From NCBI GenBank assembly GCA_964234715.1, contig OZ174279.1: a DNA stretch of 64,000 nucleotides; one strand, 5' to 3'. Within the stretch, counting starts at the first letter, position 1, and every line of letters begins with the position of its first letter. Of the stretch, positions 31,861 to 57,328 are shown piece by piece. The notes beneath the pieces are model-generated. The model was not told the origin of the DNA, did no database searches, and was given only the letters and a program-made list of their open reading frames with translations. This stretch comes from Podarcis melisellensis (Eukaryota). The position numbers and the translations under genes are program-made.

Positions 31861-34800
31861 CTATATATTCCTCTGGTAACACAAAATCTAATTATCATTG
31901 GTTTGACAATTTTCGAGCAAGCCATCTGGTTCCTTTTAAAATATGTCTCTCTAAAAATAGAACACAATTAAAATTATCCCAAATTAAAAATGAAACAGGA
32001 AAATGATAGAAAGTGCATAGAATTAAATTAGCATGCTCGGTAGCAAATAGAAAGGATAGCATCATAACTGACAGCTCCACATGTCTCTTTGTGATAAGTG
32101 ATTGAGAGACCCATTCTTTCCGCTGCATTTCTGAAGTGACTGCAAGCAACTTAGGACATCATACAAAGAACAACTGGTAAGAGCCTATTTTTTTTGTTAG
32201 AGCATTATACTACACCATTCAAATAGATAATTCATTTTGTAAAGAAACTGCACACTTGTATTTTTATTTGGGAACCAGTTATTTAGGAAAGTTATCTACA
32301 GAATTGCTCGCTCTCAGTTAACAGCATTGTTCCATGTCCCCTGAGTGCTTGAATTAGCAGTCAAGAATGGATTCAAAGTTAGTTCAGAAATGAGAAAAAC
32401 TCTTCATAAGAAAATTATTGTAGCAAGAAATTTGAAATCTTTCTACCTTCTATTGGTTACTAACTTAGATTCTTCATGATTGTCTGCCAGTGTAGTTAAC
32501 AGTACAATCCCTATGCAAGTTTATTCAAGTCTGATTGAGTTCAGTGGGACTTACATTAAAGGGTATTATCTAGAGAAGGAAAAGGAGAAAGAGATACCGT
32601 ACATTATATAAGCACAATGCTTAATTAGAGTTACCTGCCTTTCTTGCTAGACTACAATATTGAGCCAAACAGGTGACATATGTTATGCTAACTAATTAAC
32701 AAATTTGGAGTGCCTTAGGTGAGAATGCCTGATGAGAGTTTTTAGCCATTCTAAGGAGTGTACAATGCATAGATCACTTACCTGAGCACTTTAGATTTCA
32801 CTATACTAATACATTCTAGTTCTGCAGACAGTCCAGCACAATGATTGTGTCACACTGAATAATCTAAATGAAGATGGCAATATTTAAAAGAATATTCAGA
32901 CATAATAGATCTTTCTTTTACACAAAGATATAGTACTAAGTGGCTTTAAGATTGCAGCCTCATCATTCCACACCTCCATAATATTATTTTGGAACAGAAT
33001 ACATTATCTTAGGCTAGTGCCAATGATAATTCGAAAGTCCAGAAATGTAGAAATATTAATTTTCAAAGATCAGGCTTGTTTTTGTCCTGGAAGATCAAGA
33101 TAAATACTACAGTATATAATCCACACTATTATACAGCAGCACTAATGCAACTAATGTAGTACTTTAAAGTAGACTTCAAACCCACAGTTATGTTGCACTC
33201 TGCAAATTTTCTATCCAGCCCAAGCCTATGCATATTTAGTTAGATAATAATATAATTCATTGAGTTTACTTCCTGGTAAGTGAGCATAGAAATGCAGCCA
33301 TCAACCCAATCCTATGCATTTTTACACATAAGTAGGTCTTCAGTTCCTCTCCAATATTTTGATACTGTTTTGCATTTTGCCTTCCTATCAGGAAAAGTGG
33401 GCATTTACAAGTTTCCTTGATCGGAATTATTTGGTTGTATAGGAGCTGGTTTTGGGACTGCTGTATATGACCAGGAGCATTCTACAAATGCATTTAATTT
33501 TATGGGTACCAAAACCTCATTTTAGTGTAGTTTTGTTTGTTTGTTTTTGGGAATAGTAGTCAAAGAAGGTGGGTGGCGTGTCCTTCCATGTTTATCACAT
33601 GGCTGAGTGCAAGAACTTTCTCCACAGCAGCTCAGCTAAATGTCAAGCAGTTTGAGATGCAAAATGTTATTGAATTGCATTGCATTTTGCAATAGAGGCA
33701 TACATTAAAAGCAGTGTCAAAATCATACAGGGTGGTAGTTAGGAAATATAGCAACTACAATCAAGATATGTCTGTTCTGAGTTCTGGAACCTAAATGTCT
33801 TTTCCTGAGTTATGTAGCGATAAGGACACTGAAGTGGTACAAGCATGACATGCCCAGATATGTACCCCACTATCTGCCAAGTTTTCTCTGCCACACATAC
33901 TTTGAAGATAATGTTTCTGGAATCTAGAGGTCATTTCATTGTTTCATCCTCGTCCAGAACTATTGGCTTGTCATAGTGTGGTTCACAGAATGCCTCTTTA
34001 GGTTATAAAACATACGTTCTTCAAATCCAATCATCCAGTCACTTTGGCCCCTGTCTGCAAAAACAGTACAGAAGCATATATCAGTCAAGATGCAACTCTG
34101 TACACACTTACCTGGAAGTAAGTGCCATTTACCAAAGTGGAACTTCTGAGAAAACATGCACGGGGCAGAATTGAATTAGAATAGAGTTCCCAGGGACTCC
34201 TGAGGGCATTTTGCTCTTTGGGGCAGAACAGCAAATACACCTTGTACCCCAAGTCAAGGTAGATAATATGCAAGTGACCAGTTAGGGGGTTTTTTTGGAA
34301 CTGACAGCAGAAAATCCCACAAGCGCCTCTCCCCCACCCTGCCAATAAAAATGGGAAAACAACTAACATCTTGCTGCCCTTTTATGATACCCCAAACCAG
34401 CTGCTCCCTCTGCCTAGCCTTAGATGCTTCTGTTTGTGGAAGATCTCCCTTAATGCTACAGCTTCAGACTGTGCCTTGAGTCTTCTGCTGATTGCAGTTA
34501 CAGAACTGGTGCTTGATCTTCTGGTTCGGTGATCTTCATTTCATGTGACTTTCTTCTGCATTTTGTGGAGGAGCAGAAGGCAAATGCTGCCAAAGCTCTC
34601 TGAGGCAGGAGCAGGGTCCCTGACAGCAGGGAAGATTAGGAAGAGAGATGGCGACAGCAGAGGCAGAAGCAGAAGCTCTGCAGCAGAGGAAGCAGGGAGT
34701 TTGGCTTCTCCAGAGTGGTCACTCCATTGTGGTTGAGAGGGGCTTCCTCACAGGGAACAAGAGGCTCAGGAATAAAGGCATGGGAGGCAGGACAGGCACA

Positions 34801-35639
34801 AAAAGCAGGAGACTTGCAAGGATGGAGCTCCCTGATCAAAAAGAGAGCCTGTATATAGGAGAAGGAACTGGGTGGGAATAACCCACTTCTGTCTAGCTGA
34901 GGCCAAAGGGGTCCAATTCTGCTTTGTCCCAGCATGGCAGCAAGTTCCCAAGCGGGACTGGATGGCAAGTCTGAAAACTGCAGAAAGCAGGATTGAAAAC
35001 ACACACACATGCAGCAGCTCATGAGTTTATCCCTCCTTGGTTCAGATGCTGAAAACTGGCTGGTTTACCTGCACCCTGTGAAAAGCAGGATCGACCTCTT
35101 TCTCACCTGACTGATGTATTCAACCATGCCCACCGGTTCCTGCTAATGTGCAGGGAGTTCAGTCCTGCTTGGTTTGAGCCTACCAGTGCCGTAAAACCCT
35201 GCAGAAAGCAGGACTGAACTCCCTATGCATCAGTTGAAGTATGTGATAGGATGTGTGTGTTTTCAAGGTCGGCTTGAGCATTACTTTTCCTCACCCCTGC
35301 AGACCAACTTCAGCAGCTGAGTGAGACAACTCACCTGTCAAAGTTGGCTCAAGGGTGTGGGGGAGATAATAAAAAGGTCTGCCAGATTAAAAAGATTTCC
35401 CACTCCTGCTCTGCTTGGTAGCATCCCAGGTCCAGCAGGCCTAGATGCCCCTCATTCTCCCCATCTGACTTATCTTGTACTCTGGCACTCCAGTGTTATG
35501 TTCCACCAGTTTATATTTAGTATTGCACCAGCATATCTGTCTTAGTGGTGATGAACCTGGCATTTTGTCAGCTGATATGGACTTCTGCCAAATCCGGTGG
35601 CAGATAATAAATAATACTAATAACAATAATAATAAAAAT

Positions 35640-36136
35640 AAAATGTATTATTTATACCCTGCCCATCTGGCTGGGCCTCCCTAGCCACTCTGGGTGGCTT
35701 CCAACAAAATATTAAAATACAGTAATGCATCAAACATTAAAAGCTTCCCTAAACAGGGCTGCCTTCAGATGTCTTCTAAAAGTCTGGTAGTTGTTGTTCT
35801 CTTTGACATCTGGTGGGAGGGTGCAGTGGCGTAGCGTGGGGGGTGCAGGGGGGCCAGCCGCACCGGGCGCAACATCTGGGGGTTAGGGTTAGGGGGTGCA
35901 AATCCACGGGTTAGGGGGCGCAAATTACTTGCCTTGCCCCGGGTGCTGACAACCCACGCTACGCCACTGGGAGGGTGTTCCACAGGGCAGGTGCCACTGC
36001 CAAGAAGGCCCTCTGCCTGGTTCCCTGTAACTTGGCTTCTCGCAGTGAGGGAACTGGCAGAAGGCCCTCGGTGCTGGACCTCAGTGTCCGGATAGAATGA
36101 TGGGGGTGGAGACGCTCCTTCAGATATACTGGACCA
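35640..36136 (-). mobile_element. L2-like LINE 3' end interrupted by a hAT MITE
   Basis: GPVYLKERLHPHHSIRTLRSS...QGTRQRAF, the reverse-strand homologue of 56950-57280. Confidence 0.8.
35824..35969. mobile_element. hAT MITE containing TTAGGG units
   Basis: Perfect TIR cagtggcgtagcgtggg / cccacgctacgccactg; perfect 8-bp TSD ggagggtg. Confidence 0.92.
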
Positions 36137-36549
36137 AGTGCAGGATTGTACCCTAAGTTATATAACTTACATTTGGTGGGTAGACACATAAATCTCATGC
36201 TATCTCTGAGACTCAGTCATCATGATTGTCCTGTGTGAGCCAAGCTGGTTTTGTCTTTAGTTTGTCCCTTGTCTGACTCCAGTGTTTTCCCTGTGGATTG
36301 AAAGGTCAGGCAGCTACTCACATAAGTCTTTTGTTCCTAGATTTTCCTCTTCCTCAGCGATGTGCAGTTGCCCACTTTTCCCCAGTGTAAGCTCACCCCA
36401 CCCCAGGTCCTTACACCCAGTGATGGAGTGGTAAACAGAGGAGCCACTGGAGTGCCTAGGATTGTGATTTCCATTAGTTGTGAGTTTCCTACTGTTCCTT
36501 ATTACTACTCCTGTTCCTTAGGCAGTTCCTCATTATTTCCAGGTGCAAC

Positions 36550-36769
36550 ATGAAGCAAGGATCAAGCTTCCTCTTTTTCTCGCTGGTGCTTCTGCTGAAA
36601 CTTTGCTGTTACATTGAAGTGATTGCTGAAGAAGACCCCCAACAGCCACCCAGGGGAGTCTGTGCCAATTGGATGTCAGGAGCACCAGGCTACCCAGGCC
36701 ACCACGGAAATCCAGGGAGAGATGGAAGGGATGGGAAGGACGGGGAAAAGGGAGAGAAAGGAGATCAAG
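36550..36769 (+). CDS. ADIPOQ: Adiponectin, first coding exon (signal peptide, variable region with Cys, start of collagen domain)
   Basis: Acceptor ttatttccag ends at 36542 and ATG is at 36550. Translation MKQGSSFLFFSLVLLL...RGVCANWMSGAPGYPGHHGNPGRDGRDGKDGEKGEKGDQ matches the adiponectin C-x-x-WM-x-G pattern. Phase-1 donor G|gtgagc at 36769/36770. Confidence 0.95.
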
Positions 36770-37335
36770 GTGAGCGCTTTCAGCCCTCCGTTCTATACAA
36801 GCCAGCAATTCCCACAAGGGCCCCGCGAACTTTAATGGGTTTAAATCTAATCAATTGGCAGGACTGAGATCAAAGGTTCACACATCACCATGCAGGCCAG
36901 ATGACACATGAAAGTACAAGAGGAAGAAAGAAAAAACATGTCACTGCAGACATAAATTGACGATTGCGTTTCCTTCCCTTTATTTATTCCGTCATTTATT
37001 TTTAAACATGATGTCGTGCCTTTCAATCCTCTTCAGGACACCAAAGGTGCATTTTTTACATAAATGCTGTAGATAACAGTAGATAAAACTACTGAAAAAG
37101 AATAACAACCAACACTACCAAAGCATAAAAAGAGCACAGCAGAAGAATCTGTAACCAATAAGCACCCAAGGACATATTCAGGACCAAAGAGGCAGTGAGT
37201 TAGGGGATCTGTGATTAGAATCTCCCTCCCCCCTTTTCTGATAATTAGCAGGAGGAGGGCGCTTTGAAAATGAAGGACATGGTGCTCTGGGAGAGAGTCT
37301 TTACACTTTCCTCCCAAATCCTTTCCCCCATTGTA

Positions 37336-37532
37336 CAGTGGTACCTCGGGTTACATACGCTTCAGGTTACAGACTCCGCTAACCCAGAAATAGTGCTTCA
37401 GGTTAAGAACTTTGCTTCAGGATGCAGCAGGAGCTGGCCCCATTAGCTAAAGTGGTGCTTCAGGTTAAGAACAGTTTCAGGTTAAGTACAGACCTCTGGA
37501 ACGAATTAAGTACTTAACCCGAGGTACCACTG
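37336..37532. mobile_element. Tc1/mariner MITE (family A) in the ADIPOQ intron
   Basis: cagtggtacctcggg ... cccgaggtaccactg. Confidence 0.88.
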
Positions 37533-37904
37533 CAAACCCATACCAGCTGCTGTTAGCACCAGTAAGGGCAGACAGGAGCAAAATTTTGTTTTATATTTTT
37601 ATTATTATTTATAATGAAAATGATAATAAAGGGTTTGAGGTGTTGGTGGGTTTTTTTTAAAAAAACAACAACTGTGATATATAAATTTTATTCAATACTT
37701 GTTTATGACTAGCTGAGACACGGATCTCATCTGCAGACAGAAGTGGGTACATGAGGCTCCATCTCACCTTTGACCATGGGCCACGTTTATTAGCTGATAA
37801 TGATTAGGGTTAGGACATTCATTTGAACACTGAAAGAATGTTTGAGGGTCTTTTGAGGTCACACTTTGTCCAGTTGCCACCTGGATTTTTAATGGATTTA
37901 AATA

Positions 37905-38283
37905 CCGTACTTTTCTGTGTATAAGACGAGGTTTGTTTCTGAGAAAAGAATCTCAAAAAGTGGGGGTCGTCTTATACATGGATTGTGCAGAGGGGATTGG
38001 TTGCTGCTGCGAGCAGCTGATTGTCAGCAGCGATTGTGCTGTTGATTGGCTGTTGCTGCGGCAACTGGGCGAGTGATTGGCAGCTGCTGGCGGCGAGTGG
38101 GCAGAGGATTTTTGGCGACTGTGATGCGTGCAATTGGCAGCATTGTTAGGTGGGTGAGTGATTTTCATTACCCCCCCCCAATCTCAACAACTCTGGGCAA
38201 TCCCCCCATTTTCTTAATTTTGAGTCCCCCAAAATAGGGGGTGTCTTATACACAGGGGGCATGTTATACACAGAAAAATATGG
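37905..38283. mobile_element. Tc1/mariner/pogo-type MITE in the ADIPOQ intron
   Basis: TA|ccgtacttttctgtgtataa ... ttatacacagaaaaatatgg; internal gattggc repeats. Confidence 0.75.
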
Positions 38284-38780
38284 TGCTTATGCCACAGCAT
38301 AAGGAAGAATGGTAGAAACAGTTTTACTGTGTCCTATTTTTCTTGAAAAGGGTGCTGGAACTCACCATGAGCGTCTCCCTCATTCTCTTAGAATAGCCAC
38401 TCACCTGAGAGGTGCCAGAACTGAGTTTCGGCGAGTTCCAGCTGGGGAAAAAGCCCTGGGTTTACTTACATCAATATTTATACCCTAATGTCCTTCCCAC
38501 ATGTTTCCAGGGCATTTCCCAAAGAATCAAAAGTACTCTTAGGACACTGAAACTGCAGTCTTCATATTCCTGAGCAGCTCTGGAGTTTACTAGAACGAAA
38601 GCAGACCTAATAAAGCTGGGAATTACTTTCGTAGACATGAGCTGCCCGCACAAATAAGTTGACTCAGAATTTTGTTCTTGTGAAGGAAAGTGAGGCTGAA
38701 ATAATCTTTTCAGCTGAGGATGTTTGGGTGAAACCTCCTAGGGATGCTCCACTCTAACAAAAAATCCATTTTCTTGGTAG

Positions 38781-39310
38781 GTGTACCAGGCCTCAAAGGG
38801 GACAGTGGAATTTTAGGATCAGCTGGTGTTGCAGGCCCTCAAGGGGCACCAGGAAGCCCAGGACTGAAAGGGGAAAAGGGTGAAACTGCCTCCAGGTATC
38901 AGTCTGCCTTCAGTGTTGGTCTAACAGCCAGAGTCCCTTATGCCAATCTTCCGATCAGGTTTACGAAGATATTCTACAATGAGCAAAATCACTATGACGT
39001 AACGACAGGGAAATTCCGGTGCATCTTTCCCGGAGTCTACTATTTTGCATATCATCTCACCGTGTACGTGGCAGATGTAAAAGTTAGCTTGTTCAAGAAG
39101 GACACGGCGGTCATCATCACTTATGACAAGTACCAGAAGGACGACGTTGACCAAGCATCTGGTTCTGTCTTGCTCCGTCTGGAATATGGGGATGAAGTCT
39201 GGCTCCAAGTATATGGAGATGAAACAGACAATGGTATCTATGCTGATAATGTTAATGATTCTACTTTCATGGGATTCTTGCTCTACCCAAACTTGGATAA
39301 TGGACAATAG
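38781..39310 (+). CDS. ADIPOQ: Adiponectin, last coding exon (rest of collagen domain and C1q globular domain)
   Basis: Acceptor ttttcttggtag ends at 38780 and the phase matches the previous exon. C1q domain reads SAFSVGL...PIRFTKIFYNEQNHYDVTTGKF...DQASGSVLL...DEVWLQVY...GIYADNVNDSTFMGFLLY. Spliced protein is 249 aa with 22 Gly-X-Y triplets. Confidence 0.96.
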
Positions 39311-39578
39311 AATATCAGGGGTGGGAGAGAGGGGGAAAATAGCCAATAATTGTTTTGGATTTTCCTTGCAGTCTACTTGTCAACGCAAGGAACCACAGCA
39401 AATTGAATTTAGATAGGTTCAAGGGCGGTTCACACATGCATGTCCACTGCTTGAACATCCAGTGATGTCCATATGAATGAGCCATCACAGATACAACCCA
39501 CTGATATCCCTTCTTCACCACAGTGCGTTTCAATAGAGTCAGTTCACACATTCAGCTGTTCAACATCAAGAGCATGTT

Positions 39579-40034
39579 AATAAAATATAGAGAAAGCAAG
39601 TGATATACATGCACATGTGATTCCGGAATCTGCCTGTATTCATCAAAGACACCTGCTCAAACCTCTTCCTTTAGAAATGGGTGTTATTTACTTACATTTA
39701 TACTGACAAATAGAGCAAACAATAAGCTTCAAAGAGAGAAGCCTAAAGCAATAGAAATTCAGTAATGAGGTGCAGCCATATAAGCATTGTTCTGCACAAA
39801 TGGAAGCAACTAATGCTTGATAATATTATCATGATGTGGCTTTCAGAGTGATTTCTCATTAGATCTGCATTGCTTTCTCAGATATATTTTAATACATATT
39901 CCTGTTTCTTTAATGAGTTACGTGTGGCTTCTGCACCTTAGCATATGCACAGGATGTCATTAGCACTTAAATAAAAATGAAGGTTTGCAACAGAATATTT
40001 GGAGCAACAAATATGTTACTGAATTACAAATAAA
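39579..40034 (+). terminator. Candidate ADIPOQ polyadenylation signals
   Basis: AATAAA at 39579, 39970 and 40029; the last is followed by a T-rich downstream tract. Confidence 0.55.
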
Positions 40035-40121
40035 AATCCTGCTCACCCACAGTTCTATTTTTTTATTTCTTTTGTGCTGAAATCAGATGGCATATATATA
40101 TTCTGATCAAACAATCTAAAG

Positions 40122-40899
40122 CAGGGGTCAGCAAACTTTTTCAACAGGGGGCCAGTCCACTGTCCCTCAGACCTTGTGGGAGGCCAGACTATATGTTGCC
40201 AGCGTTGCCCAAATGTGATTTTTTTGGGAGGGAGGGGTGTGTTTCCTCATACACCCACGCTGCTTCCTTTGTGTTTTACACATTGACAGTTATTATTTCT
40301 CTTGTAAGGCGGGGTGGGGGGCTGAGGTAAGCGCGCCATTGCTGTCAGCCCTGGAGAGCGAGTGCTCGTGTGTGGGTGAAGGGAAAAGCCATTGGCCATG
40401 CTAAGTCAGGCCTGTGCCGCTCATGCAAAAATGAGGGAAGACGAGGCGGCTGCGGCTATTTACCTTTCCATGGCTTGTACTGTGTAGCTAACAAGTGGCC
40501 TCCCCACCAGAGTGCAGAACTGTTTTGGAGTGCAGCCATCCAGGCACTCCCCACTTCCTTTGGTGGGGAGCACCGCCGCCACAGACACCAGCGGGCGTCT
40601 CTCCTGAGGTGCCTCCGAGCCCCTGATGCCACAACTGCCTTTCCTAAGGTCCATGGTAGAAATCCGATCTGTGGCTCCTTTTCCCTCTTCCCCACCCTGG
40701 AAGAAAAGATTGCTGTGTGCGCGTGACAGACGGAGAAGGGGCTTGTCTCAAGCAGCCGCCCACCTCACTTTTGACCCCCAAGCCGGGCTGAGTCACAAAA
40801 ACCATTGCACACTGCCTGGATCCCTGGAACATCCGCGGGCTGGATCTAGAAGGTTATTGGGCCTGATCTGGCTCGCGGACCTTAGTTTGCTGACCCATG
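40122..40899. mobile_element. Non-autonomous hAT (Charlie-like) element carrying a captured host gene fragment (Pack-TIR type)
   Basis: TIRs caggggtcagcaaact / agtttgctgacccatg (15/16 match); 8-bp TSD atctaaag (40114-40121) / agctaaag (40900-40907). Confidence 0.9.
40464..40654 (-). pseudogene. CRPPA: Captured exon 1 of CRPPA/ISPD (CDP-ribitol pyrophosphorylase A)
   Basis: Kozak ATG (ctaccATGG); [40 protein letters not shown] versus recalled human [40 protein letters not shown]; ends at donor AG|gtaaat; no other CRPPA exon seen in the window. Confidence 0.88.
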
Positions 40900-41659
40900 A
40901 GCTAAAGTACTATGAACTATACAATATTCATAGTGAAACCAATGATACATACTTGCTATTATTCCTTTAAAGAACACTTATCCTGGTTGTTAATGATTCA
41001 AAATATCTGTTGGTTTTTGTTCATCAGCTTCCTTGCAATTCTCTGTCAGTCTTTCCCCACCTTACGGACATAACCATTACAAAATCTATTTTCTTTTGAG
41101 AGAATACCTATGTGTTGCCCATGTGTTTTCAGTTTTCTGTGATACATTCACATACCTTCTCTCTCTCTCTCTGCCACACACAGAGCCTTCTGGTTAGCTA
41201 CTTGCCTGACAGTCTTCTTTTGTGATAATAAGAAAAGCTTGTGGAAAGTTTCATTTTCAGCAGAGTTTGCCCAAAGCTCACCGCATATCTGAATCCATCA
41301 GAAATGCCCTTGCAGGGAGAGAGTTACTTAACAGCCACAAAATTTAAAGAGAAAAAATGTCAACTTCCAATTTAGCAATGTTAAACATTACCTTTAATAG
41401 TATCAAATGCAGCAAAGTCAGGAAGCCCCACTGGGCATATTAATGTAAAGAGCAGGAGGAAACAACCACAATGAAACACAAGAGGACTAAGGATATAAAA
41501 AAGGGACTAGAATAATGACTTTGAAACATTTGTTATTTATTTAGTTCAACAGTTTTTATACCACAGAATCGTAGAGCTGGAAGGGACACCAAAGGTCTTC
41601 TATTCCAACCCTGTGCAATGCAAGAATCACAACTAGAGAGTTTGGATTTGGATTTGGAA

Positions 41660-41873
41660 TTGATATCCCGCTTTATCACTACCCTAAGGAGTCTCAAAGT
41701 GGCTCACAATCTCCTTTCTCTTCCTCCCCCACAACAAACACTCTGTGAGGTGAGTGGGGCTGAGAGACTTCAGAGAAGTGTGACTGGCCCAAGGTCACCC
41801 ATAAGCTGCATGTGGAGGAGCGGAGACACGAACCCGGTTCACCAGATTACGAGTCCACCGCTCTTAACCACTA
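41660..41873 (-). mobile_element. MIR-like squamate SINE nested in a CR1 3' fragment
   Basis: tgtgaggtgagtggggctgagaga...cccaaggtcaccc...taaccactaca; CR1-like sequence on both sides (41566-41630 and 41875-41990). Confidence 0.65.
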
Positions 41874-42954
41874 CAGATGACTATCCAACCTCTATTTAAA
41901 AACCTCCAATGAAGGAGAGTCCACCATCTTCCAACTTAGTCCATTCTACTGTTGAACAGCAATTGTCAGAAAATTCTTCCTAATGTTTACTCGGTGGGGT
42001 TCTCCTTGCACAGGCTCTGCCCCTCCCCAGCGGCACCCACTGAAAGGGTATAAGAACCCTAAATAAACCAATTCTGGAGCAGGATGGAGCAGGGCTAGTG
42101 ATGGATCCAAAGACTCACAAGTCAGTTTAGTTCCTGGAACAGGGCCTGATACATGTCTCTGATTTGAACGCTTGGAGTTGGTGAAGCAAAATAGGAGAAA
42201 AATATCTTCTGCCATGGACAGCAGTGGAGAACTGACTGCTCCACACACTCCACACAGTTAGGATTGCCTGTAAATTTTTTAATCGAAACCTCTGAAATTG
42301 TTAAAAGATCATTGACCTTTTTAAAAAGCGCAGGTAGAATTACTGTACAGTGTTTAAAACAACCATAAGGAATTACTCTTACTACATTGCCTTTTCACAG
42401 TTCAAGCCGGTCTGTACCCACGAGTGATCCCTTGGATCTTGCTGAATATTTTCCAGCGAACAACTGAAATATAAAGGATCCCTTGCTTTAGCTCATTTAA
42501 ACTGCTCAAAAGTTGAGAGAAATGGGGATATGATGCAGTCACTGCAAGAGTCCACAAGATGGTGCAAAGATATCATCCCTTTGTACAAAAACTCAAATAC
42601 TTGTTTGCTAGACAATCAACTAGTAATGCATGGAGGTAGCTGAAACTCAATTTATCTCCCCCCCCCCCAAAAAAAATCAAAATTCCATTTAGCTTATCTT
42701 GGTTTTACCATTTCAGTCTAGGTGACTCTCTATTTGCCACGTTTCCCATATGTCTATTAAATATACCCAACCGTTGCATCCCAGGTTATTGCCTTAAGAA
42801 ACATCGCTCAGGTGTGCCTTTGTAACATTTTAGTGCATTGTAAAAACACCATCTGTATCCCTGAGGCATTGGGAGCTTCTATGGCACCCAAAGGAATTAT
42901 AAATTAGGAGCTCTCTGTTTATGACCCAATGGCTCTTCCGTATAGATGGGATTA

Positions 42955-43183
42955 AAAAGGTAAAGGTGTGGGAGGGGGGCTAACCGTTAGGTCCAGTCAC
43001 GGACGACTCTGGAGTTGCGACGCTCATCTCACTTTACTGACCGAGGGAGCCAGCGTAAAGCTTCCGGGTCATGTGGCCAGCATGACTAAGCCAGCATTAC
43101 TAAACCAGAGCAGCGCACGGAAACGCCTTTTACCTTCCCACAGGAGTGGTACCTATTTATCTACTTGCACCTTGACATGCTTT
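42955..43183 (-). mobile_element. Sauria SINE, 3' part only
   Basis: aaaaggtaaagg tail and conserved core; stops abruptly where the GC-rich array begins. Confidence 0.8.
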
Positions 43184-43227
43184 GACTGTCCGGGGCGATT
43201 TAAAAGCCCCCGGACGGCTTTTGAAGC

Positions 43228-44310
43228 CTCCCCCCGCCGCCCGGCATCGGGGCATCGTCCCGATGCCGGGCGGCGGGGCAGGAACGCCTCCCCCCGCCGC
43301 CCGGCTTCGGGGCATCGTCCCGATGCCGGGCGACGGGGCGAGAAAGCCTCCCCCCCGCCGCCCGGCATCGGAACCATGTCCCGATGCTGGGCGACGGGGC
43401 GGGAAAGCCTCCCCGCGCCGCCCGGCATCGGAACCATGTCCCGATGCCGGGCGACGGGGCGAGAAAGCCTCCCCCCGCCGCCCGGCATCGGAACCATGTC
43501 CCGATGCCGGGCGACGGGGCGGGAAAGCCTCCCCCCGCCGCCCGGCATCGGAACCATGTCCCGAAGCCGGGCGGCCGGGCGGGAAAGCCTCCCCCCGCCG
43601 CCCGGCTTCGGGGCATCGTCCCGATGCCGGGAAGTGGGGCAGGAACGCCTCCCCCAGCCGCCCGGCTTCGGGGCATCGTCCCGATGCCGGGCGGTGGGGC
43701 AGGAACGCCTCCCCCTGCCGCCCGGCATCGGGGCATCGTCCCGATGCCGGGCGGTGGGGCAGGAACGCCTCCCCCAGCCGCCCGGCATCGGAACAATGTC
43801 CCGAAGCCGGGCGGCCGGGCGGGAAAGCCTCCCCCCGCCGCCCGGCTTCGGGGCATCGTCCCGATGCCGGGCGGTGGGGCAGGAACGCCTCCCCCAGCCG
43901 CCCGGCTTCGGGGCATCGTCCCGATGCCGGGCGGTGGGGCAGGAACGCCTCCCCCAGCCGCCCGGCTTCGGGGCATCGTCCCGATGCCGGGCGGTGGGGC
44001 AGGAACGCCTCCCCCAGCCGCCCGGCTTCGGGGCATCGTCCCGATGCCGGGCGGTGGGGCAGGAACGCCTCCCCCAGCCGCCCGGCTTCGGGGCATCGTT
44101 CCGATGCCGGGCGGTGGGGCAGGAACGCCTCCCCCAGCCGCCCGGCTTCGGGGCATCGTTCCGATGCCGGGCGGTGGGGCAGGAACGCCTCCCCCCACCT
44201 CCCGGCATCGGAACGATGTCCCGAAGCCGGGCGGCCGGGCGAGAAAGCCTCCCCCCGCCGCCCGGCATCGGAACATGTCCCGAAGCCGAGCGGCGGGGCG
44301 AGAAAGCCTT
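43228..44310. repeat. GC-rich 60-bp minisatellite, about 18 units, each with an internal palindrome
   Basis: Consecutive 60-nt lines are nearly identical; the unit contains ccgcccggc[a/t]tcggg...cccgatgccgggcgg. Confidence 0.97.
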
Positions 44311-44554
44311 TGTCCCCCCTGCCTGCCTTCCCAGGGGCTTTTAAATCGCCCCGGACAGCGGAGAAGTCCTCCGCTGTCCCGGGCGATTTTAAAATGCCGC
44401 CCGCCAGAAGAGGTCGGGGGAAGGCGTTTTCCATAGGAACGCATTAATTGATTTTCAATGCATTCCTATGGAAAACCGTGCATCGCAAGACGAAAAACTC
44501 GCAAGACGAAGAGACTTGCGGAACGAATTAATTTCGTCTTGCGAGGCACCACTG
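44311..44554. mobile_element. Right arm of the Tc1/mariner/Tigger-type MITE that hosts the minisatellite
   Basis: gcggaacgaattaatttcgtcttgcgaggcaccactg|TA terminus is related to the family A TIR; left TIR absent. Confidence 0.75.
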
Positions 44555-44556
44555 TA

Positions 44557-46022
44557 ATTCTATATTTTCCTTTCCCTTGACATTTTAGCACTCATCAATT
44601 TTACAACAATTTTTAAGGTATACTTTAAATTTCTTCCAGTCTTCTTCCACCGTCTTTTTCTTGGTCACGGATTCTGCCAGTCATCTCCGCCAGTCCCATG
44701 TAATCAATCACCTTTGTCTGCCATTCTTCCAGTGTGGGTAGTTCTTGTGTCTTCCAATACTTTGCTAAAAGGATCCTTGCTGCTGTGGTGGCGTACATAA
44801 AAAAACGTCCTATCCTTCTTTAACACCAATTGGCCGACCATACCCAGGAGAAATGCCTCTGGTTTCTTATGAAAGGTACATTTAAGTACCTTCTTAATTT
44901 CATTATAGATCATTTCCCAGAAGGCTTTAATCTTCGGACAGGTCCACCAAAGGTGATAAAAGGTTCCTTCAGTCTCATTACATTTCCAGCATTTATTATT
45001 GGGCAAATGATAGATTTTTGCGAGCTTGGTTGGGGTCATGTACCACCTGTAAATCATTTTCATAATATTTTCTCTTAAGGAATTACATGCCGTAAATTTT
45101 ATACCGGTGGTCCATAACTGTTCCCAATCCACAAACATAATGTCATGACCAATGTCTTGTGCCCACTTAATCATAGCTGATTTGACAGTCTCATCTAGTG
45201 TGTTCCATTTCAACAGCAAGTTGTACATTCTTGATAAATTCTTAGTATTGGGTTCTAACAGCTCTGTTTCTAATTTGGATCTCTCCATCTGGAAGCCAAT
45301 TTTCCTGTCCTGTTTAAACACCTCCATTATCTGATGGTAATGAAGCCAATCTCGTACTTTAGACTTTATTTTCTCAAAACTCTGTAATTTAATTTTTCCA
45401 CTCTCTTGCTCTAAAATTTCACAGTATTTTGGCCATTTAGATTCCATATTAGGTCTTTTCACCTCCTTAGCTTCCATTGGTGACAACCACCTAGGGGTTT
45501 TATTTTCCAACAAATCCTTATATCGAATCCAAACATTATATAATGTTTTCCTGACAATATGATTTTTAAATCCTTTGTGAGTTTTAACCTTGTCATACCA
45601 GATATATGCATGCCAACCGAATCTATTATCAAATCCTTCCAAATCCAAAATGTCTGTATTCTCAAGAAGTAGCCAGTCTTTCAACCAGCAGAAAGCTGCC
45701 GATTCATAGTACAGTCTTAAGTCCGGCAGGGCAAACCCCCCTCTGTCTTTTGCATCAGTTAATATCTTAAATTTTATTCTGGGCTTTTTGCCCTGCCAGA
45801 CAAATTTAGATATATCTTTCTGCCACTTCTTGAAACAGTCCATTTTATCCACAATCTGTAATGTCTGAAACAAAAATAGCATTCTAGGCAATACATTCAT
45901 CTTAATTACAGCAATTCGGCCTAACAAGGAAAGTCCCAAATTTGACCATATTTCTAGATCTTTCTTTACCTCTGTCCAACATTTGTCATAATTGTCTTTA
46001 AATAGGTTCACATAATTTATGC
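44557..46022 (-). mobile_element. L1-clade LINE, 3' part of ORF2
   Basis: About 430 open codons: LSLLGRIAVIKMNVLPRMLFLFQ, GGFALPDLRLYY, CCHC knuckle CWKC...HLWWTC; frameshift near the C-terminus. Confidence 0.93.
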
Positions 46023-46206
46023 ATCTAAGGATACTGCAAAAAGCACAAGAGAATGGCAGCAAATTCCATTTAAAAATCCCCAGAATTTAGACAATTGCAT
46101 TGCTATTTTTTATATATAAAAAATACATTGATTTTATTCTACAAAATCCCATGCATGCAGTTCAGTCTTCCTGGTGTTTATAATATTGTGGCCATGCTTC
46201 AGTGCA

Positions 46207-46573
46207 AGGTAAAGGTAAAGGTACCCCTGCCCGTACGGGCCAGTCGTGTCCGACTCTAGGGTTGTGCGCCCATCTCACTTAAGAGGCCGTGGGCCAGCAC
46301 TGTCCGGAGACACTTCCAGGTCATGTGGCCAGCATGACGAAGCTGCTCTGGCGAGCCAGCACCAGCAGAGCACATGGAAACACCGTTTACCTTCCTGCTA
46401 TAAAGCGGTACCTATTTATCTACTTGCACTTAGGGGTGCTTTCGAACTGCTAGGTGGGCAGGAGCTGGGACCGAAAGACGGGAGCTCACCCCGCCGCGGG
46501 GATTCGAACCGCTGACCATGTGATCGGCAAGTCCTAGGCACTGAGGTTTTACCCACAGCACCACCCACGTCCC
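46207..46573 (-). mobile_element. Sauria SINE, near full length
   Basis: (aaaggt)n tail, conserved core and head; flanked by a cttcagtgcaagg direct repeat (46197 / 46575). Confidence 0.9.
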
Positions 46574-48679
46574 ACTTCAGTGCAAGGCAGAGGGCAAAAA
46601 TAACCCAAGGCACTGGTGATTTAAAAAATCTGAGTTTTTCTTACATTTCCCTGATCCTTGGTACTGAACCCATTAAACAAGGCCACACCACACACGCACT
46701 TGTAGTTAAGTGCTGACATCATGTGGAATACTAATAGCGAACTCAGCCTCCAGTGTGCTCCCATGGCATTCTTGTCTCGAGGAATATTCCCAATACTATC
46801 AGTGCCTGGATCACTGATCAATGAAAAGCAGATTAGATCCATCTGGCTGAGGTGAAAGACCTCTTTCTCGTGCTTTCCCCACCGAAATGAAAAGGAAACC
46901 CGTGGTGTTTGCGCCTTCCTCTGCGCAGCCTGAACTGTGACCTACCTGTCTTTCAGCAATACCAGCCGCAGCGCTTTTAATCATCTCTCTGCGGGGACCC
47001 TGAAAAGAATGTCCTAATTGCTGCCCCCAATTGCTCCCTGCAATGGGGGGTCTCCCTCTTAATGACTGCATGATGCAGTTCTGCTTCAGAGAGCTGCTCT
47101 TGTGACCCGCTGGGCTCGTCCCTTTCAGAGCAGCTTGCACAGCGCAGTGCAATCAATAGCTTGACAGAAGCGCCGAAAAGGTCCCGCAATCATATTAACA
47201 GCAAGGAGGAAAGACTTGTCTGTCACAGTGCTTTTGACAGAGAGGGAAGTATCATGGGGCGAGTTCCTCCCTAGCAGCTTCCGCCGTAGCTGTATCATGT
47301 CTGACGGTGGGAATCCTTGTTTTTCCTGCAATTCAAATCCAAAAACATTCATGTTGCCTTATAAGAGCGGCGAGGAACCTCAAAGCAGCAACGCCCACCT
47401 TTCCCAGGTCTAATGTATATGATGTCAGGGGCCGGAAATGGCTAAAAGGATAGGGAGCACATTCCCGATTCTTCCTATGTCACAAAAAGTTGGCGCTTTT
47501 TTTAATTTGGTGCCTTTTCCTGTCACCTCGCCCATGTTAAAAGTTCAGCTGAAAAATTTAACTGGTTAGCAGAGAAAAAAATGGCTACTGTATTTCTTTT
47601 ACTTTGTAACTTGTTAATTCCCAAGGCTGCACATGACACACATAATAAACACAACAAAGACTCTTGTAGTATCTTAATGCAATGCATCTTAAGGACTGTT
47701 TTGCAGATTTCCATCCCTAATCATGTGTAACTCAGGATAACACTTCAGTGCATCTGATGGAGCCACTGCACAACTGTGATGGGCAAAGACACAACAGGTG
47801 ATGTTTTTCATTCTGTACAGATCTTAAAAGATATAGAAATCCCTGCAGAGTTTGAACCTCTTTTATGCAAATTTTCTTGGACAAGGCTAAAGTGTCGTGC
47901 TAATAACTCTGTAGAACAGGAACTCAGCCAGTTCTAAGCACATGTTGTAAGCCAACTACCGTATTTAGAACTGTCCCTCGTGAAAGTGTGACCCTCCTGT
48001 TCCCTGCACTGAATTTCTTTAAAACTCCCAAAATGGCCTCTGGTCTCCCATCAAGACAAGAAAGCAGCGATCCTTTTTTCTACAGCAAAGTTAAAAAGCA
48101 AAGGGACATAAATATTCTCTGTGCTGTAAAAGGACACAATTCAGGGCAATAAAAAGACAGATGAGCAGGGCAGCTGGATGCAAAAGATTGGTGGAATTTT
48201 CTACCTTTATGAAGGGTTTTTGTTTTTTTGCTGTTGTTACATTGAAATACGTACAGCAAACACTACCAGTTCAGATTCCTTCTTTTACAGTTACACCTGT
48301 CCCTTTGCTTCTCTTCTTCCTAGAAGTGAAGTTATGCCCTGTATATATCTTGTAGTGTGGCAGCATCTACACTGTGCAACTCCCAGCCTATTGACACCAG
48401 GCAGGCGCTTTTACTGTACTGTTTTCAGTGCCTGCTTAAAAAGGGGCCTTGTTTAGGCAAGCCTATTCAGACATGCAGAAGCTACATGCATTTCATCTCT
48501 TTTTAGCTACTGCTGATTTGAATCATCTTTTGTTTTTAAATACCTGCTTTTTTAATAAGAATTTTAACATTTTAATATATACTCTTGCAAACAGTTTACA
48601 GGCTGTCTTACGATTCGTTATCTATGACAATCAAGCAGCATATAGAACATTGTCTTAATTAAATAAATAAAACAAAGAG

Positions 48680-56779: not shown

Positions 56780-57282
56780 TGCTTTATACCCAGAAACTAC
56801 AACTAATCCAGAATGCCGCAGCTAGACTGGTGACTGGGGGCGGCCGCCGAGAGCACATAACACCGGTCTTGAAAGACCTACATTGGCTCCCAATACGTTT
56901 CCGAGCACAATTCAAAGTGTTGGTGCTGACCTTTAAAGCCCTAAACGGCCTTGGTCCAGTATACCTGAAGGAGCGTCTCCACCCCAATCATTCTACCCGG
57001 ACACTGAGGTCTAGCGCCGAGGGCCTTCTGGCGGTTCCCTCATTGCGAGAAGCAAAGCTGCAGGGAACCAGGTAGAGGGCCTTCTCGGTAGTGGTGCCCT
57101 TCCTGTGGAACGCCCTCCCATCAGAGTCAAAGCGATAAACAACTACCTGACATTTAGAAGACATCTTAAGGCAGCCCTGTTCAGGGAAGTTTTAATGTGT
57201 GACATTTTAGTGTATTTTTGGTCTCTCTGGAAGCCACCCAGAGTTACTGGGGAAACCCAGCCACATGGGCAGGGTACAAATA

Positions 57283-57328
<46 letters not shown>

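What the first reader, a model, noticed from the sequence alone, without database searches (positions are those of the whole stretch)
40122..40899. hAT transposon that has captured CRPPA/ISPD exon 1 with upstream sequence and intron start (Pack-TIR-type gene capture)
Seen: 16-bp TIRs (caggggtcagcaaact / agtttgctgacccatg) and a 7/8 TSD (atctaaag / agctaaag) bound 778 bp. Between short TE arms (~40122-40195 and ~40815-40899) lies, on the minus strand, GC-rich upstream sequence, a Kozak ATG (40654), 63 codons ending ...[10 protein letters not shown], a donor gtaaat and about 260 bp of intron-like sequence. Established: the peptide matches the N-terminal nucleotide-binding segment of CRPPA/ISPD, and human exon 1 ends, as recalled, at the same phase-2 Arg codon. 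An 8-bp TSD centred on TA is typical of Charlie-type hAT elements. Inference: the retained donor and intron indicate DNA-level capture (transduplication) rather than retroposition. Such capture is well known for plant Pack-MULEs but is rarely described in reptiles. The TSD shows the composite moved as a unit, so it may be a multi-copy family spreading a promoter-exon-donor module.
Basis: partly seen in the sequence, partly recalled or inferred. Interest (0 to 1): 0.9.

Follow-up and report, generated by a model that had tools for sequence, protein, structure and literature searches.

The report
Lizard hAT transposon carrying CRPPA start
A 778-base cut-and-paste (hAT-type) transposon just downstream of a wall-lizard-like adiponectin gene carries a decaying DNA copy of the upstream region, first exon, splice donor and start of intron 1 of the sugar-nucleotide gene CRPPA. 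It is one copy of a family of dozens, so it is a clear example of a known but rare kind of gene-fragment capture in animals.

Summary
16-nt inverted ends (15/16) and an 8-bp duplication (7/8) bound window 40122-40899. Between two short arms lies, on the minus strand, about 630 bp colinear with the true CRPPA locus of Podarcis raffonei. It covers about 190 bp upstream of the conserved ATG, exon 1, the donor and the first 242 bp of intron 1 (79-80% identity, E 1e-152 or lower).

No other CRPPA exon is in the window. The true gene has 10 exons in 50 kb elsewhere and has no arms beside exon 1. The site is 812 bp 3' of the adiponectin stop codon.

The same insertion, with the same flanks and duplication, is in Podarcis lilfordi, where it is annotated as a 69-aa "gene". 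It is also in two or three coded relatives.

The cargo is multicopy: about 10-70 copy equivalents and 8-33 distinct contigs per genome in three species. At least one paralogue ends at the same terminus with a different flank. A cargo-less parent MITE with both arms was found in Lacerta agilis.

This copy is dead: CpG o/e 0.44 against 0.84 in the gene, a 15-bp and a 49-bp deletion, and catalytic Arg changed to Cys. No RNA covers it.

It is a multicopy Pack-hAT and a new member of a known kind. This scan's earlier notes report similar captures of other genes elsewhere in this genome.

The parts
40114..40121 (.). Left target-site duplication, atctaaag
   Evidence: Read. It matches 40900-40907 at 7/8, and the same octamer is in the P. 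lilfordi orthologue. It fits the hAT target pattern nTnnnnAn (recalled knowledge).
40122..40198 (+). Left arm of the non-autonomous hAT element (TIR 40122-40137). Homology to the abundant parent family ends at 40194 or 40198.
   Evidence: TIR. Summed contig depth is about 1.9 million against about 40 for single-copy DNA. Hundreds of contigs diverge just before 40122 and just after 40194/40198. Identity to the left arm of a cargo-less MITE in L. agilis (L004 7214-7281) is 79%.
40199..40463 (-). Cargo: start of CRPPA intron 1, including donor GTAAAT at 40463-40458. Its distal 49 bp were deleted in this copy, next to 40199.
   Evidence: Aligns to P. raffonei L001 5370-5611. The P. lilfordi orthologous copy keeps 49 further bases that match L001 up to about 5664.
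40464..40654 (-). Cargo: CRPPA exon 1 coding part from the conserved ATG. It has a 15-bp in-frame deletion after the ATG, and Arg is changed to Cys in the GxGxR motif.
   Evidence: ORF. Human ISPD match E 1.6e-9. 84% identity to L. agilis CRPPA residues 62-124. DNA alignments.
40655..40829 (-). Cargo: about 175 bp upstream of the conserved ATG (5' UTR and possibly core promoter of CRPPA). The last about 20 nt overlap the ambiguous junction with the right arm.
   Evidence: Aligns to L001 4974-5162 and to the same region of P. muralis, L. agilis and Z. vivipara. The source segment is a CpG island (GC 0.63, CpG o/e 0.84).
40810..40899 (+). Right arm of the hAT element (TIR 40884-40899). Its inner boundary lies between 40810 and 40830.
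   Evidence: TIR. Depth is about 24,000 against about 40 for single-copy DNA. Identity to the right arm of the L. agilis MITE (L004 6979-7050) is 82%, and by eye the similarity continues inward to about 40810.
40900..40907 (.). Right target-site duplication, agctaaag
   Evidence: Read. It is the same in the P. lilfordi orthologue.

Best explanation
Window 40122-40899 is a non-autonomous hAT transposon, a Pack-TIR or 'Pack-hAT'.

Origin (inferred). A parent MITE of about 300 bp lost its internal region of about 150 bp. That region was replaced by about 690 bp copied as DNA from the 5' end of the lizard's own CRPPA gene. The copied piece held about 190 bp upstream of the conserved ATG, exon 1, the splice donor and about 295 bp of intron 1. 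The most likely mechanism is template switching during double-strand-break or gap repair, or at a stalled replication fork. A 5-nt microhomology (TGTTG) at the left-arm junction and a patch of similarity at the right-arm junction point to this.

Spread (shown in part). A hAT transposase supplied in trans then mobilised the composite as one unit to dozens of sites. The capture is about as old as the split of Podarcis from Lacerta and Zootoca.

This copy (shown). It landed 812 bp 3' of the adiponectin stop codon, with the cargo antisense to that gene. This happened before the window's species split from P. lilfordi. The copy has since decayed by CpG loss and deletions. It cannot encode a CRPPA enzyme, and no transcript is seen from it.

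Shown: the anatomy, the source, that it is not the gene, shared orthology, that it is multicopy, and the decay. Inferred: the capture mechanism, the trans-acting transposase, and any promoter activity.
For: Ends:
- TIRs match 15/16 and the TSD 7/8.
- The left TIR starts CAGGG.
- The flanks of hundreds of other arm copies show a TCTAGA-like target (loose ends).

Source:
- Window 40199-40829(-) aligns with P. raffonei CRPPA L001 4974-5611 at 79-80% identity, E 1e-167 and 2e-152. The alignment is a single colinear block across the exon-intron boundary.
- The same block is found in the real genes of P. muralis, L. agilis and Z. vivipara.

Not the gene:
- tblastn with the 486-aa P. raffonei protein finds only exon 1 in the 64-kb window. 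It finds all exons within 50 kb of L001.
- The neighbouring gene is adiponectin.
- The real loci in four species have no arms beside exon 1.

Parent MITE: both arms are paired around about 150 bp of unrelated sequence in L. agilis, L004 6979-7281.

Mobilised as a unit and multicopy:
- Cargo depth is 700-2800 against about 40 for single-copy DNA.
- 8-33 distinct contigs per run carry alternative letters.
- Depth is higher near both arms than in the middle.
- Several internal-deletion derivatives are shared by species.
- X9 contig 28 runs from cargo through the right arm to exactly 40899, then continues for 31 unlike letters.
- An X5 contig joins 40141 to 40856.

Orthology: L002 (P. lilfordi) is colinear with window 34182-48013 at 92-96% identity. 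It holds the same element, TSDs and TIR mismatch. Junction-spanning contigs are present in organisms A and B, and the left junction in E.

Decay:
- CpG o/e is 0.44 against 0.84 in the gene, with 22 against 53 CpGs. Divergence between the two orthologous copies is 27% at source CpG sites against 7% elsewhere (window copy against the real gene: 32% against 10%).
- There are 15-bp and 49-bp deletions.
- The Arg of the GxGxR motif is Cys here, and the P. lilfordi copy has other motif changes.

Age:
- The two orthologous copies share 18 states absent from all four real genes.
- They attach on the branch between the Podarcis genes and the Lacerta+Zootoca genes.
- A diverged copy of the exon sits in a Zootoca receptor gene model.
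Against: - No second full copy (arms, cargo and its own TSD) was read base by base. The multicopy evidence comes from short Logan contigs and summed depths, which the tool itself says are not copy numbers.
- The source was compared in other species, not in the window's own assembly.
- No autonomous hAT partner was identified, so the superfamily call rests on TIR and TSD features only.
- The two arms differ about 77-fold in depth, which is unexplained.
- No empty site was found. All species examined carry the insertion.
- The microhomology at the left junction depends on an arm subfamily inferred from loose ends at 40198.
Confidence: 0.85

Rival explanations
1. The capture happened in place. 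A resident MITE at this site was broken and repaired with CRPPA sequence (transposition-independent gap filling, the usual origin of single-copy Pack-TIRs in animals). The composite itself never moved.
For: PMC8277862 finds that most animal Pack-TIRs are single-copy and arise this way. Microhomology at the junctions fits gap filling. No second complete copy was read in full.
Against: The cargo is multicopy in three species, with 8-33 distinct contigs. Depth is highest next to the arms. A paralogous contig joins cargo to the right arm and then to a different flank. A diverged copy lies in a Zootoca receptor gene. In the cited survey, in-place captures are mostly from within 5 kb in cis. Here the source is an unrelated locus.
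Confidence: 0.06
2. A two-MITE composite. Two separate MITE copies inserted on either side of CRPPA exon 1, and the transposase used their outer ends to move everything between them.
For: A MITE of this family lies in CRPPA intron 1 of L. agilis, 4.3 kb from exon 1.
Against: The two arms are the complementary left and right parts of one parent MITE. Each carries a single outer TIR and no inner TIR. The CRPPA loci of four lacertids have no arm next to the captured segment. The L. agilis MITE is absent from the other three loci, and at this family's apparent abundance a copy in that locus may be chance.
Confidence: 0.04
3. It is the real first exon of CRPPA, or of a functional CRPPA paralogue, that happens to lie between transposon remnants.
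For: There is an intact 64-codon ORF with a good ATG context and a conserved donor. P. lilfordi annotates the orthologous copy as a CRPPA gene.
Against: There are no further exons in 40 kb downstream. The real 10-exon gene is elsewhere. The catalytic Arg is lost, CpGs have decayed, and there are deletions. Homology to the gene stops at the arms. No RNA covers it in the one RNA-like run laid.
Confidence: 0.01
4. It is a retrocopy, or an RNA-mediated chimera of a CRPPA transcript with a transposon.
For: None beyond the presence of exon sequence.
Against: The first about 250 aligned bases of intron 1 follow the exon colinearly. About 27 bp upstream of the annotated ORF start are included. There is no poly(A) tail. 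There are TIRs and an 8-bp TSD rather than L1-type hallmarks.
Confidence: 0.005

Closest known systems
Pack-TIRs of animals, in particular the multicopy Pack-hAT-N8_XT of Xenopus tropicalis, which carries 291 bp of the CAPSL 5' UTR (Tan et al. 2021, PMC8277862)
   Same: A hAT-type non-autonomous element whose interior is replaced by host gene 5' sequence. The parental gene is elsewhere and has no transposon. Microhomology lies at a breakpoint. The cargo is GC-rich. The element is multicopy through transposition with distinct flanks.
   Different: This one carries a whole first exon with donor and intron start, not only UTR. Its apparent copy number is far higher: about 10-70 against 3. That survey found only 4 multicopy cases among the Pack-TIRs of 100 genomes, none reported from a lizard in the text read. 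The family here is old and shared across lacertid genera.
Pack-MULEs of rice and other plants
   Same: A transposon with terminal inverted repeats that acquires gene fragments as DNA, introns included, and amplifies them. It prefers GC-rich 5' ends of genes (as summarised in PMC8277862 and PMC5861414).
   Different: The superfamily differs: hAT with an 8-bp TSD and short TIRs, not Mutator with 9-11-bp TSDs and long TIRs. The host is an animal. No evidence of expression or small-RNA function was found here.
Non-autonomous hAT/hobo elements of Anolis carolinensis that incorporate extraneous DNA (Novick et al. 2010, PMC3014272)
   Same: Lizard hAT families whose non-autonomous members are structurally diverse because they take up foreign filler DNA.
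   Different: The filler described there is mostly fragments of other transposons. Here it is a single-copy host gene's upstream region, first exon and intron start.
Helitron gene captures in vespertilionid bats (PMC4224331)
   Same: Vertebrate DNA transposons that pick up promoters and first exons and spread them in many copies.
   Different: Those are rolling-circle elements without TIRs or TSDs, and they capture by read-through. The paper was only seen in a search list and was not read.

Membership tests
hAT superfamily (non-autonomous member) | 8-bp target-site duplication | tested here: met
   atctaaag / agctaaag, 7/8. The P. lilfordi orthologue has an identical pair.
hAT superfamily (non-autonomous member) | Short TIRs (about 10-25 nt) beginning YARNG | tested here: met
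   16-nt TIRs, 15/16. The left end is CAGGG. The right end reads CATGG, one mutated base that P. lilfordi shares. The YARNG consensus is recalled knowledge.
hAT superfamily (non-autonomous member) | Target preference nTnnnnAn | tested here: met
   This TSD is aTCTAAAg. The consensus of flanks of hundreds of other arm copies ends in TCTAGA-like letters, but agreement is low at 0.33-0.38.
hAT superfamily (non-autonomous member) | Related autonomous element encoding a hAT transposase (DDE domain plus hAT dimerisation domain) with the same ends | not tested
   No transposase ORF lies in the element. No autonomous partner was sought because the assembly is not searchable here. The Charlie or Buster subgroup therefore stays open.
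Pack-TIR (gene-fragment-carrying TIR transposon) | TIR transposon termini and TSD enclosing non-transposon host sequence | tested here: met
   Arms, cargo and TSD. A parent MITE without cargo.
Pack-TIR (gene-fragment-carrying TIR transposon) | Parental copy elsewhere in the genome, not itself flanked by the transposon | tested here: met
   CRPPA loci of P. raffonei, P. muralis, L. agilis and Z. vivipara hold the segment without adjacent arms. These are relatives, not the window's own assembly.
Pack-TIR (gene-fragment-carrying TIR transposon) | Multicopy class: several copies with the same junctions and different TSDs | tested here: inconclusive
   Depth 18-70 times single copy. 8-33 variant contigs. 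One paralogous contig runs from cargo through the arm to the terminus and then has a different flank. No full second copy with its own TSD was read.
MITE | Short (under about 800 bp), non-coding, TIR-bounded, high copy number | tested here: met
   The parent form is about 300 bp. Arm depth is 600 to 47,000 times single copy. The composite itself is 778 bp and moderately repeated.
Functional CRPPA/ISPD gene | Full IspD cytidylyltransferase domain plus ISPD_C domain, encoded by about 10 exons | tested here: not met
   Only exon 1 is present. The Pfam IspD match is 24 bits, below the 27-bit cut-off, and covers profile positions 1-39 of 221.
Functional CRPPA/ISPD gene | Conserved GxGxR(M/L) nucleotide-binding motif | tested here: not met
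   GSGEC here against GSGER in all real lacertid proteins and in human.

The most novel reading that the evidence does not exclude
This element is one instance of a lineage-wide habit. In lacertid lizards, one abundant hAT MITE lineage has repeatedly captured CpG-island 5' ends of unrelated housekeeping genes (upstream region, exon 1, donor, intron start) and amplified each to tens of copies.

This scan's untested notes list CDAN1, UBE2G1, DCLK2, ATP6V0A2, EIF3B-like and TGM3-like cargos in the same genome, and CRPPA is now added.

That would be an animal counterpart of rice Pack-MULEs. It would scatter portable promoter-exon-donor modules that can seed chimeric or antisense transcripts. Two possible examples are the Zootoca receptor gene model with a CRPPA-derived exon, and this copy, which points into the 3' end of adiponectin.
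Probability: 0.4. Interest if true: 0.65.

Novelty: new member of a known kind. Interest (0 to 1): 0.4.

Why it matters
- It is a cleanly documented vertebrate case in which a cut-and-paste transposon copied a gene's upstream region, first exon and splice donor as DNA and multiplied them. The source locus, a cargo-less parent element, the junctions and a cross-species orthologue are all in hand.
- Multicopy Pack-TIRs were found only four times in a 100-genome animal survey (PMC8277862). A family of dozens in lacertids, next to similar families with other cargos in the same genome, suggests these lizards are a good system for studying how DNA transposons shuffle 5' gene ends.
- It has a practical cost for annotation. 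The orthologous copy is annotated as a 69-aa CRPPA 'gene' in P. lilfordi. A sister copy is built into a receptor gene model in Zootoca.
- For this particular copy nothing suggests a present function.

Tried and rejected
- The search for homologous proteins with the 64-aa ORF found nothing in its length range. This is uninformative.
- The search of earlier findings by place near the window, by the words CRPPA/ISPD and by sequence gave nothing.
- The look-up of encoding contigs had no record for the Zootoca receptor model P0001 or for P. muralis isoform X2. The arms around the Zootoca copy therefore could not be checked.
- A search for further copies of either arm in the window and in L001 found none.
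- L003 (a Logan contig for P0190) is a snake-like real exon 1, not a family copy.
- My alignment A2 used the wrong frame for the window row. Only its rows of real proteins are used. The window peptide was compared properly.
- An empty site in Lacerta or Zootoca could not be tested. Their adiponectin loci can be fetched only by an exact full protein, which would need a joined spliced model, and I left that step out.
- The RNA-like run X15 shows no contig over the cargo. This is weak negative evidence from one run of another species.
- Rejected readings: real gene, retrocopy, two-MITE composite (see rivals).
- The L. agilis MITE lying 4.3 kb from exon 1 could be a trace of capture in cis. I do not rely on it. 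It is absent from the other three CRPPA loci, and with a family this abundant a copy there may be chance.

Full report
**1. What is in the sequence**

- A 16-nt inverted repeat lies at 40122-40137 and 40884-40899, 15/16 complementary. It is the only long inverted pair in the neighbourhood.
- It is flanked by atctaaag (40114-40121) and agctaaag (40900-40907).
- On the minus strand a 64-codon ORF runs from the ATG at 40654.
- The coding sequence ends ...ATGGAAAG at 40464 and is followed by GTAAAT, so an Arg codon is split in phase 2.
- The peptide matches human ISPD (PDB 4cvh_A residues 6-46, E 1.6e-9).
- It matches the first 39 positions of Pfam IspD at 24 bits, under the 27-bit cut-off because the piece is short.
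- It is 84% identical to residues 62-124 of Lacerta agilis CRPPA (E 1e-36).

**2. Where the interior comes from**

A profile-free search of protein representatives and a word-based search gave lacertid CRPPA proteins. Their loci were fetched:
- Podarcis raffonei, L001
- Lacerta agilis, L004
- Zootoca vivipara, L005
- P. muralis, L006

Window 40199-40829 (minus strand) aligns as one colinear block with L001 4974-5611 at 79-80% identity, E 1e-167 and 2e-152. The block holds:
- 27 bp before the annotated ORF start
- the whole annotated exon 1 (L001 5001-5369, with the conserved Met about 160 bp in)
- the donor GGTAAATAG
- 242 bp of intron 1

The same block is present in the other three real genes. 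Retention of intron and upstream sequence shows a DNA-level copy, not a retrocopy.

**3. It is not the gene**

- tblastn with the 486-aa P. raffonei protein finds only exon 1 in the 64-kb window. All other hits have E above 0.6.
- The same query finds every exon within 50 kb of L001, with exon 2 only 6.5 kb from exon 1.
- The window's neighbouring gene is adiponectin. The ORF at 38744-39310(+) has a C1q domain (E 3.5e-39) and collagen repeats. It matches PDB adiponectin at E 1.7e-187.
- The element lies 812 bp 3' of that stop codon, with the cargo antisense to it.
- An RNA-like contig of a related species covers 39500-40040, probably the adiponectin 3' UTR. No such contig covers the cargo.

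**4. The arms and the parent element**

Contigs of three related genomes were laid on the region.
- Single-copy depth is about 40.
- Summed depth is about 1.9 million over the left arm, about 24,000 over the right arm and 700-2800 over the cargo.
- Hundreds of contigs diverge just before 40122 and just after 40194 or 40198. This fixes the outer and inner ends of the left arm.
- The flanks of those other copies tend to end in TCTAGA-like letters, a hAT-like target pattern.

Neither arm recurs in the window or in L001. In L. agilis CRPPA intron 1 (L004 6979-7281) both arms occur together at 79-82% identity, in the same relative order, around about 150 bp of unrelated sequence. That is a cargo-less parent MITE of about 300 bp.

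Its continuation after '...actatat' (a G-run) matches the loose-end consensus seen after 40194. Its right arm resembles the window inward to about 40810. The right junction is therefore ambiguous between 40810 and 40830, because the arm and the CRPPA upstream sequence resemble each other there.

At the left junction, the P. lilfordi copy and the real genes show that the cargo originally ended ...CATGGCAAC. It continued into the arm with a shared CAACA (TGTTG on the plus strand). This is a 5-nt microhomology if the parent was the arm subfamily that extends to 40198.

**5. Orthologue in another species**

A 69-aa protein annotated 'D-ribitol-5-phosphate cytidylyltransferase' in P. lilfordi (P0188) led to locus L002.
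- L002 is colinear with window 34182-48013 at 92-96% identity.
- It carries the same element at the same place, with the same two octamers and the same TIR mismatch.
- The two copies have decayed differently. P. lilfordi lost about 160 bp (window 40693-40854). The window lost 49 bp of distal intron next to the left arm, and 15 bp after the ATG.
- Junction-spanning contigs show the insertion also in coded organisms A and B, and its left junction in E.
- No empty site was seen.

**6. Multicopy family**

- Cargo depth is 18-70 times single copy.
- At individual positions, 8-33 distinct contigs per run carry a letter different from this copy.
- Depth is highest next to the arms, the profile expected of a family with internal deletions.
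- Several deletion derivatives recur in two species at single-copy depth.
- One contig of organism E runs from 40669 through the right arm to exactly 40899 and then has 31 letters unlike this flank.
- One contig of organism B joins 40141 to 40856.

Other copies are about 84-85% identical to this one.

A further diverged copy of the exon, with in-frame upstream sequence, sits in the Zootoca vivipara model XP_034992723.1. It occupies the place of the cysteine-rich domain, between ANF_receptor and 7tm_3, and ends at the CRPPA donor. Zootoca's real CRPPA is a separate, conserved gene.

I could not read a second complete copy with its own TSD, so 'moved as a unit' is strongly indicated rather than proven.

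**7. Decay and age**

- The source segment is a CpG island: GC 0.63, CpG o/e 0.84, 53 CpGs. The window copy has GC 0.56, o/e 0.44 and 22 CpGs.
- Divergence between the two orthologous copies is 27% at source CpG sites against 7% elsewhere. For the window copy against the real gene the figures are 32% and 10%.
- The Arg of the GxGxR motif is Cys here (CGC to TGC). The P. lilfordi copy has other motif changes.
- The two orthologous copies share 18 states absent from all four real genes.
- In an unrooted ML tree they attach on the branch separating the Podarcis genes from the Lacerta+Zootoca genes. Supports are 81, 87 and 100.
- The capture is therefore about as old as the split of these genera. 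This fits the Zootoca copy.

**8. Mechanism**

Shown: a parent MITE interior was replaced by ectopic gene sequence, with microhomology at the junction. The product is repeated, with the same terminus and different flanks.

Inferred: capture by template switching during repair of a break or excision gap, or at a stalled fork. These are the gap-filling and FoSTeST models of PMC8277862. A hAT transposase supplied in trans then mobilised the product. The cargo may include the CRPPA core promoter, but no transcription start is known and no RNA was seen.

**9. Comparison with what is known**

- Tan et al. 2021 (PMC8277862) list 370 Pack-TIRs in 100 animal genomes. Of these, 208 are on hAT elements. 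Only four are multicopy: three in Xenopus tropicalis and one in alligator. They tend to carry GC-rich cargo.
- Novick et al. 2010 (PMC3014272) describe Anolis hAT elements that incorporate extraneous DNA, mostly other transposons.
- The present element is a member of that known kind. It is notable for its copy number, its age and its complete upstream-exon-donor-intron cargo.
- This scan's earlier notes report similar hAT captures of other genes in the same genome, several of them multicopy. I did not test those notes. They are the basis of the more novel reading that lacertid hAT elements do this systematically.

**10. Limits**

- The source comparison used relatives' assemblies, not the window's own.
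- Depths from contigs are not copy numbers.
- The hAT subgroup is untested.
- A joined spliced adiponectin protein, which would have allowed fetching the orthologous site in Lacerta and Zootoca, was not built.

Noticed in passing
window 38744-39310 (+), with 39500-40040: Last exon of adiponectin (C1q domain plus collagen repeats). An RNA-like contig of a related species covers 39500-40040, probably the 3' UTR, with AATAAA at 39971 and 40030. The transposon sits about 80 bp beyond that.
   Followed up: partly
L002 6001-6210 (Podarcis lilfordi OX395130.1): The orthologous transposon copy is annotated as a 69-aa gene named D-ribitol-5-phosphate cytidylyltransferase (P0188). This is an annotation artefact caused by the captured exon.
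   Followed up: yes
P0001 (Zootoca vivipara XP_034992723.1), residues about 440-522: A vomeronasal/calcium-sensing-receptor-like gene model (ANF_receptor 1-392, 7tm_3 544-794) contains a diverged CRPPA exon-1 copy, with its upstream sequence in frame, where the cysteine-rich domain should be. The copy ends at the CRPPA donor. It is either exonisation of a family copy or a model artefact. The locus could not be fetched.
   Followed up: partly
L004 6979-7281 (Lacerta agilis CRPPA intron 1, minus strand): A cargo-less MITE of about 300 bp with both arms of this family and an internal two-fold repeat of about 60 bp, 4.3 kb from CRPPA exon 1. It is absent from the same intron in P. raffonei, P. muralis and Zootoca.
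   Followed up: partly
window 40122-40198 against 40840-40899: The two arms of the element differ about 77-fold in summed contig depth (about 1.9 million against about 24,000). The left arm may be shared with a much more abundant element that continues with a G-run or poly-A after 40194/40198.
   Followed up: no
window 43226-44299: A 60-bp GC-rich minisatellite with a palindromic unit, 17.9 copies, 91% matches. It leaves all six frames open for about 1.4 kb. The region is not colinear with P. lilfordi.
   Followed up: partly
window 44704-46062 (-): A 452-aa ORF without a Pfam hit. Its C-terminal Cys/His motif and overall look suggest the 3' part of an L1-type ORF2.
   Followed up: no
window 40934-40938, with L002 5512-5871: P. 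lilfordi has an extra 359-bp repeat inserted just beyond the element. Copies of that repeat lie at window 56944-57300 and 35628-35821. Organism E may share the insertion, because its contig breaks at 40934.
   Followed up: no
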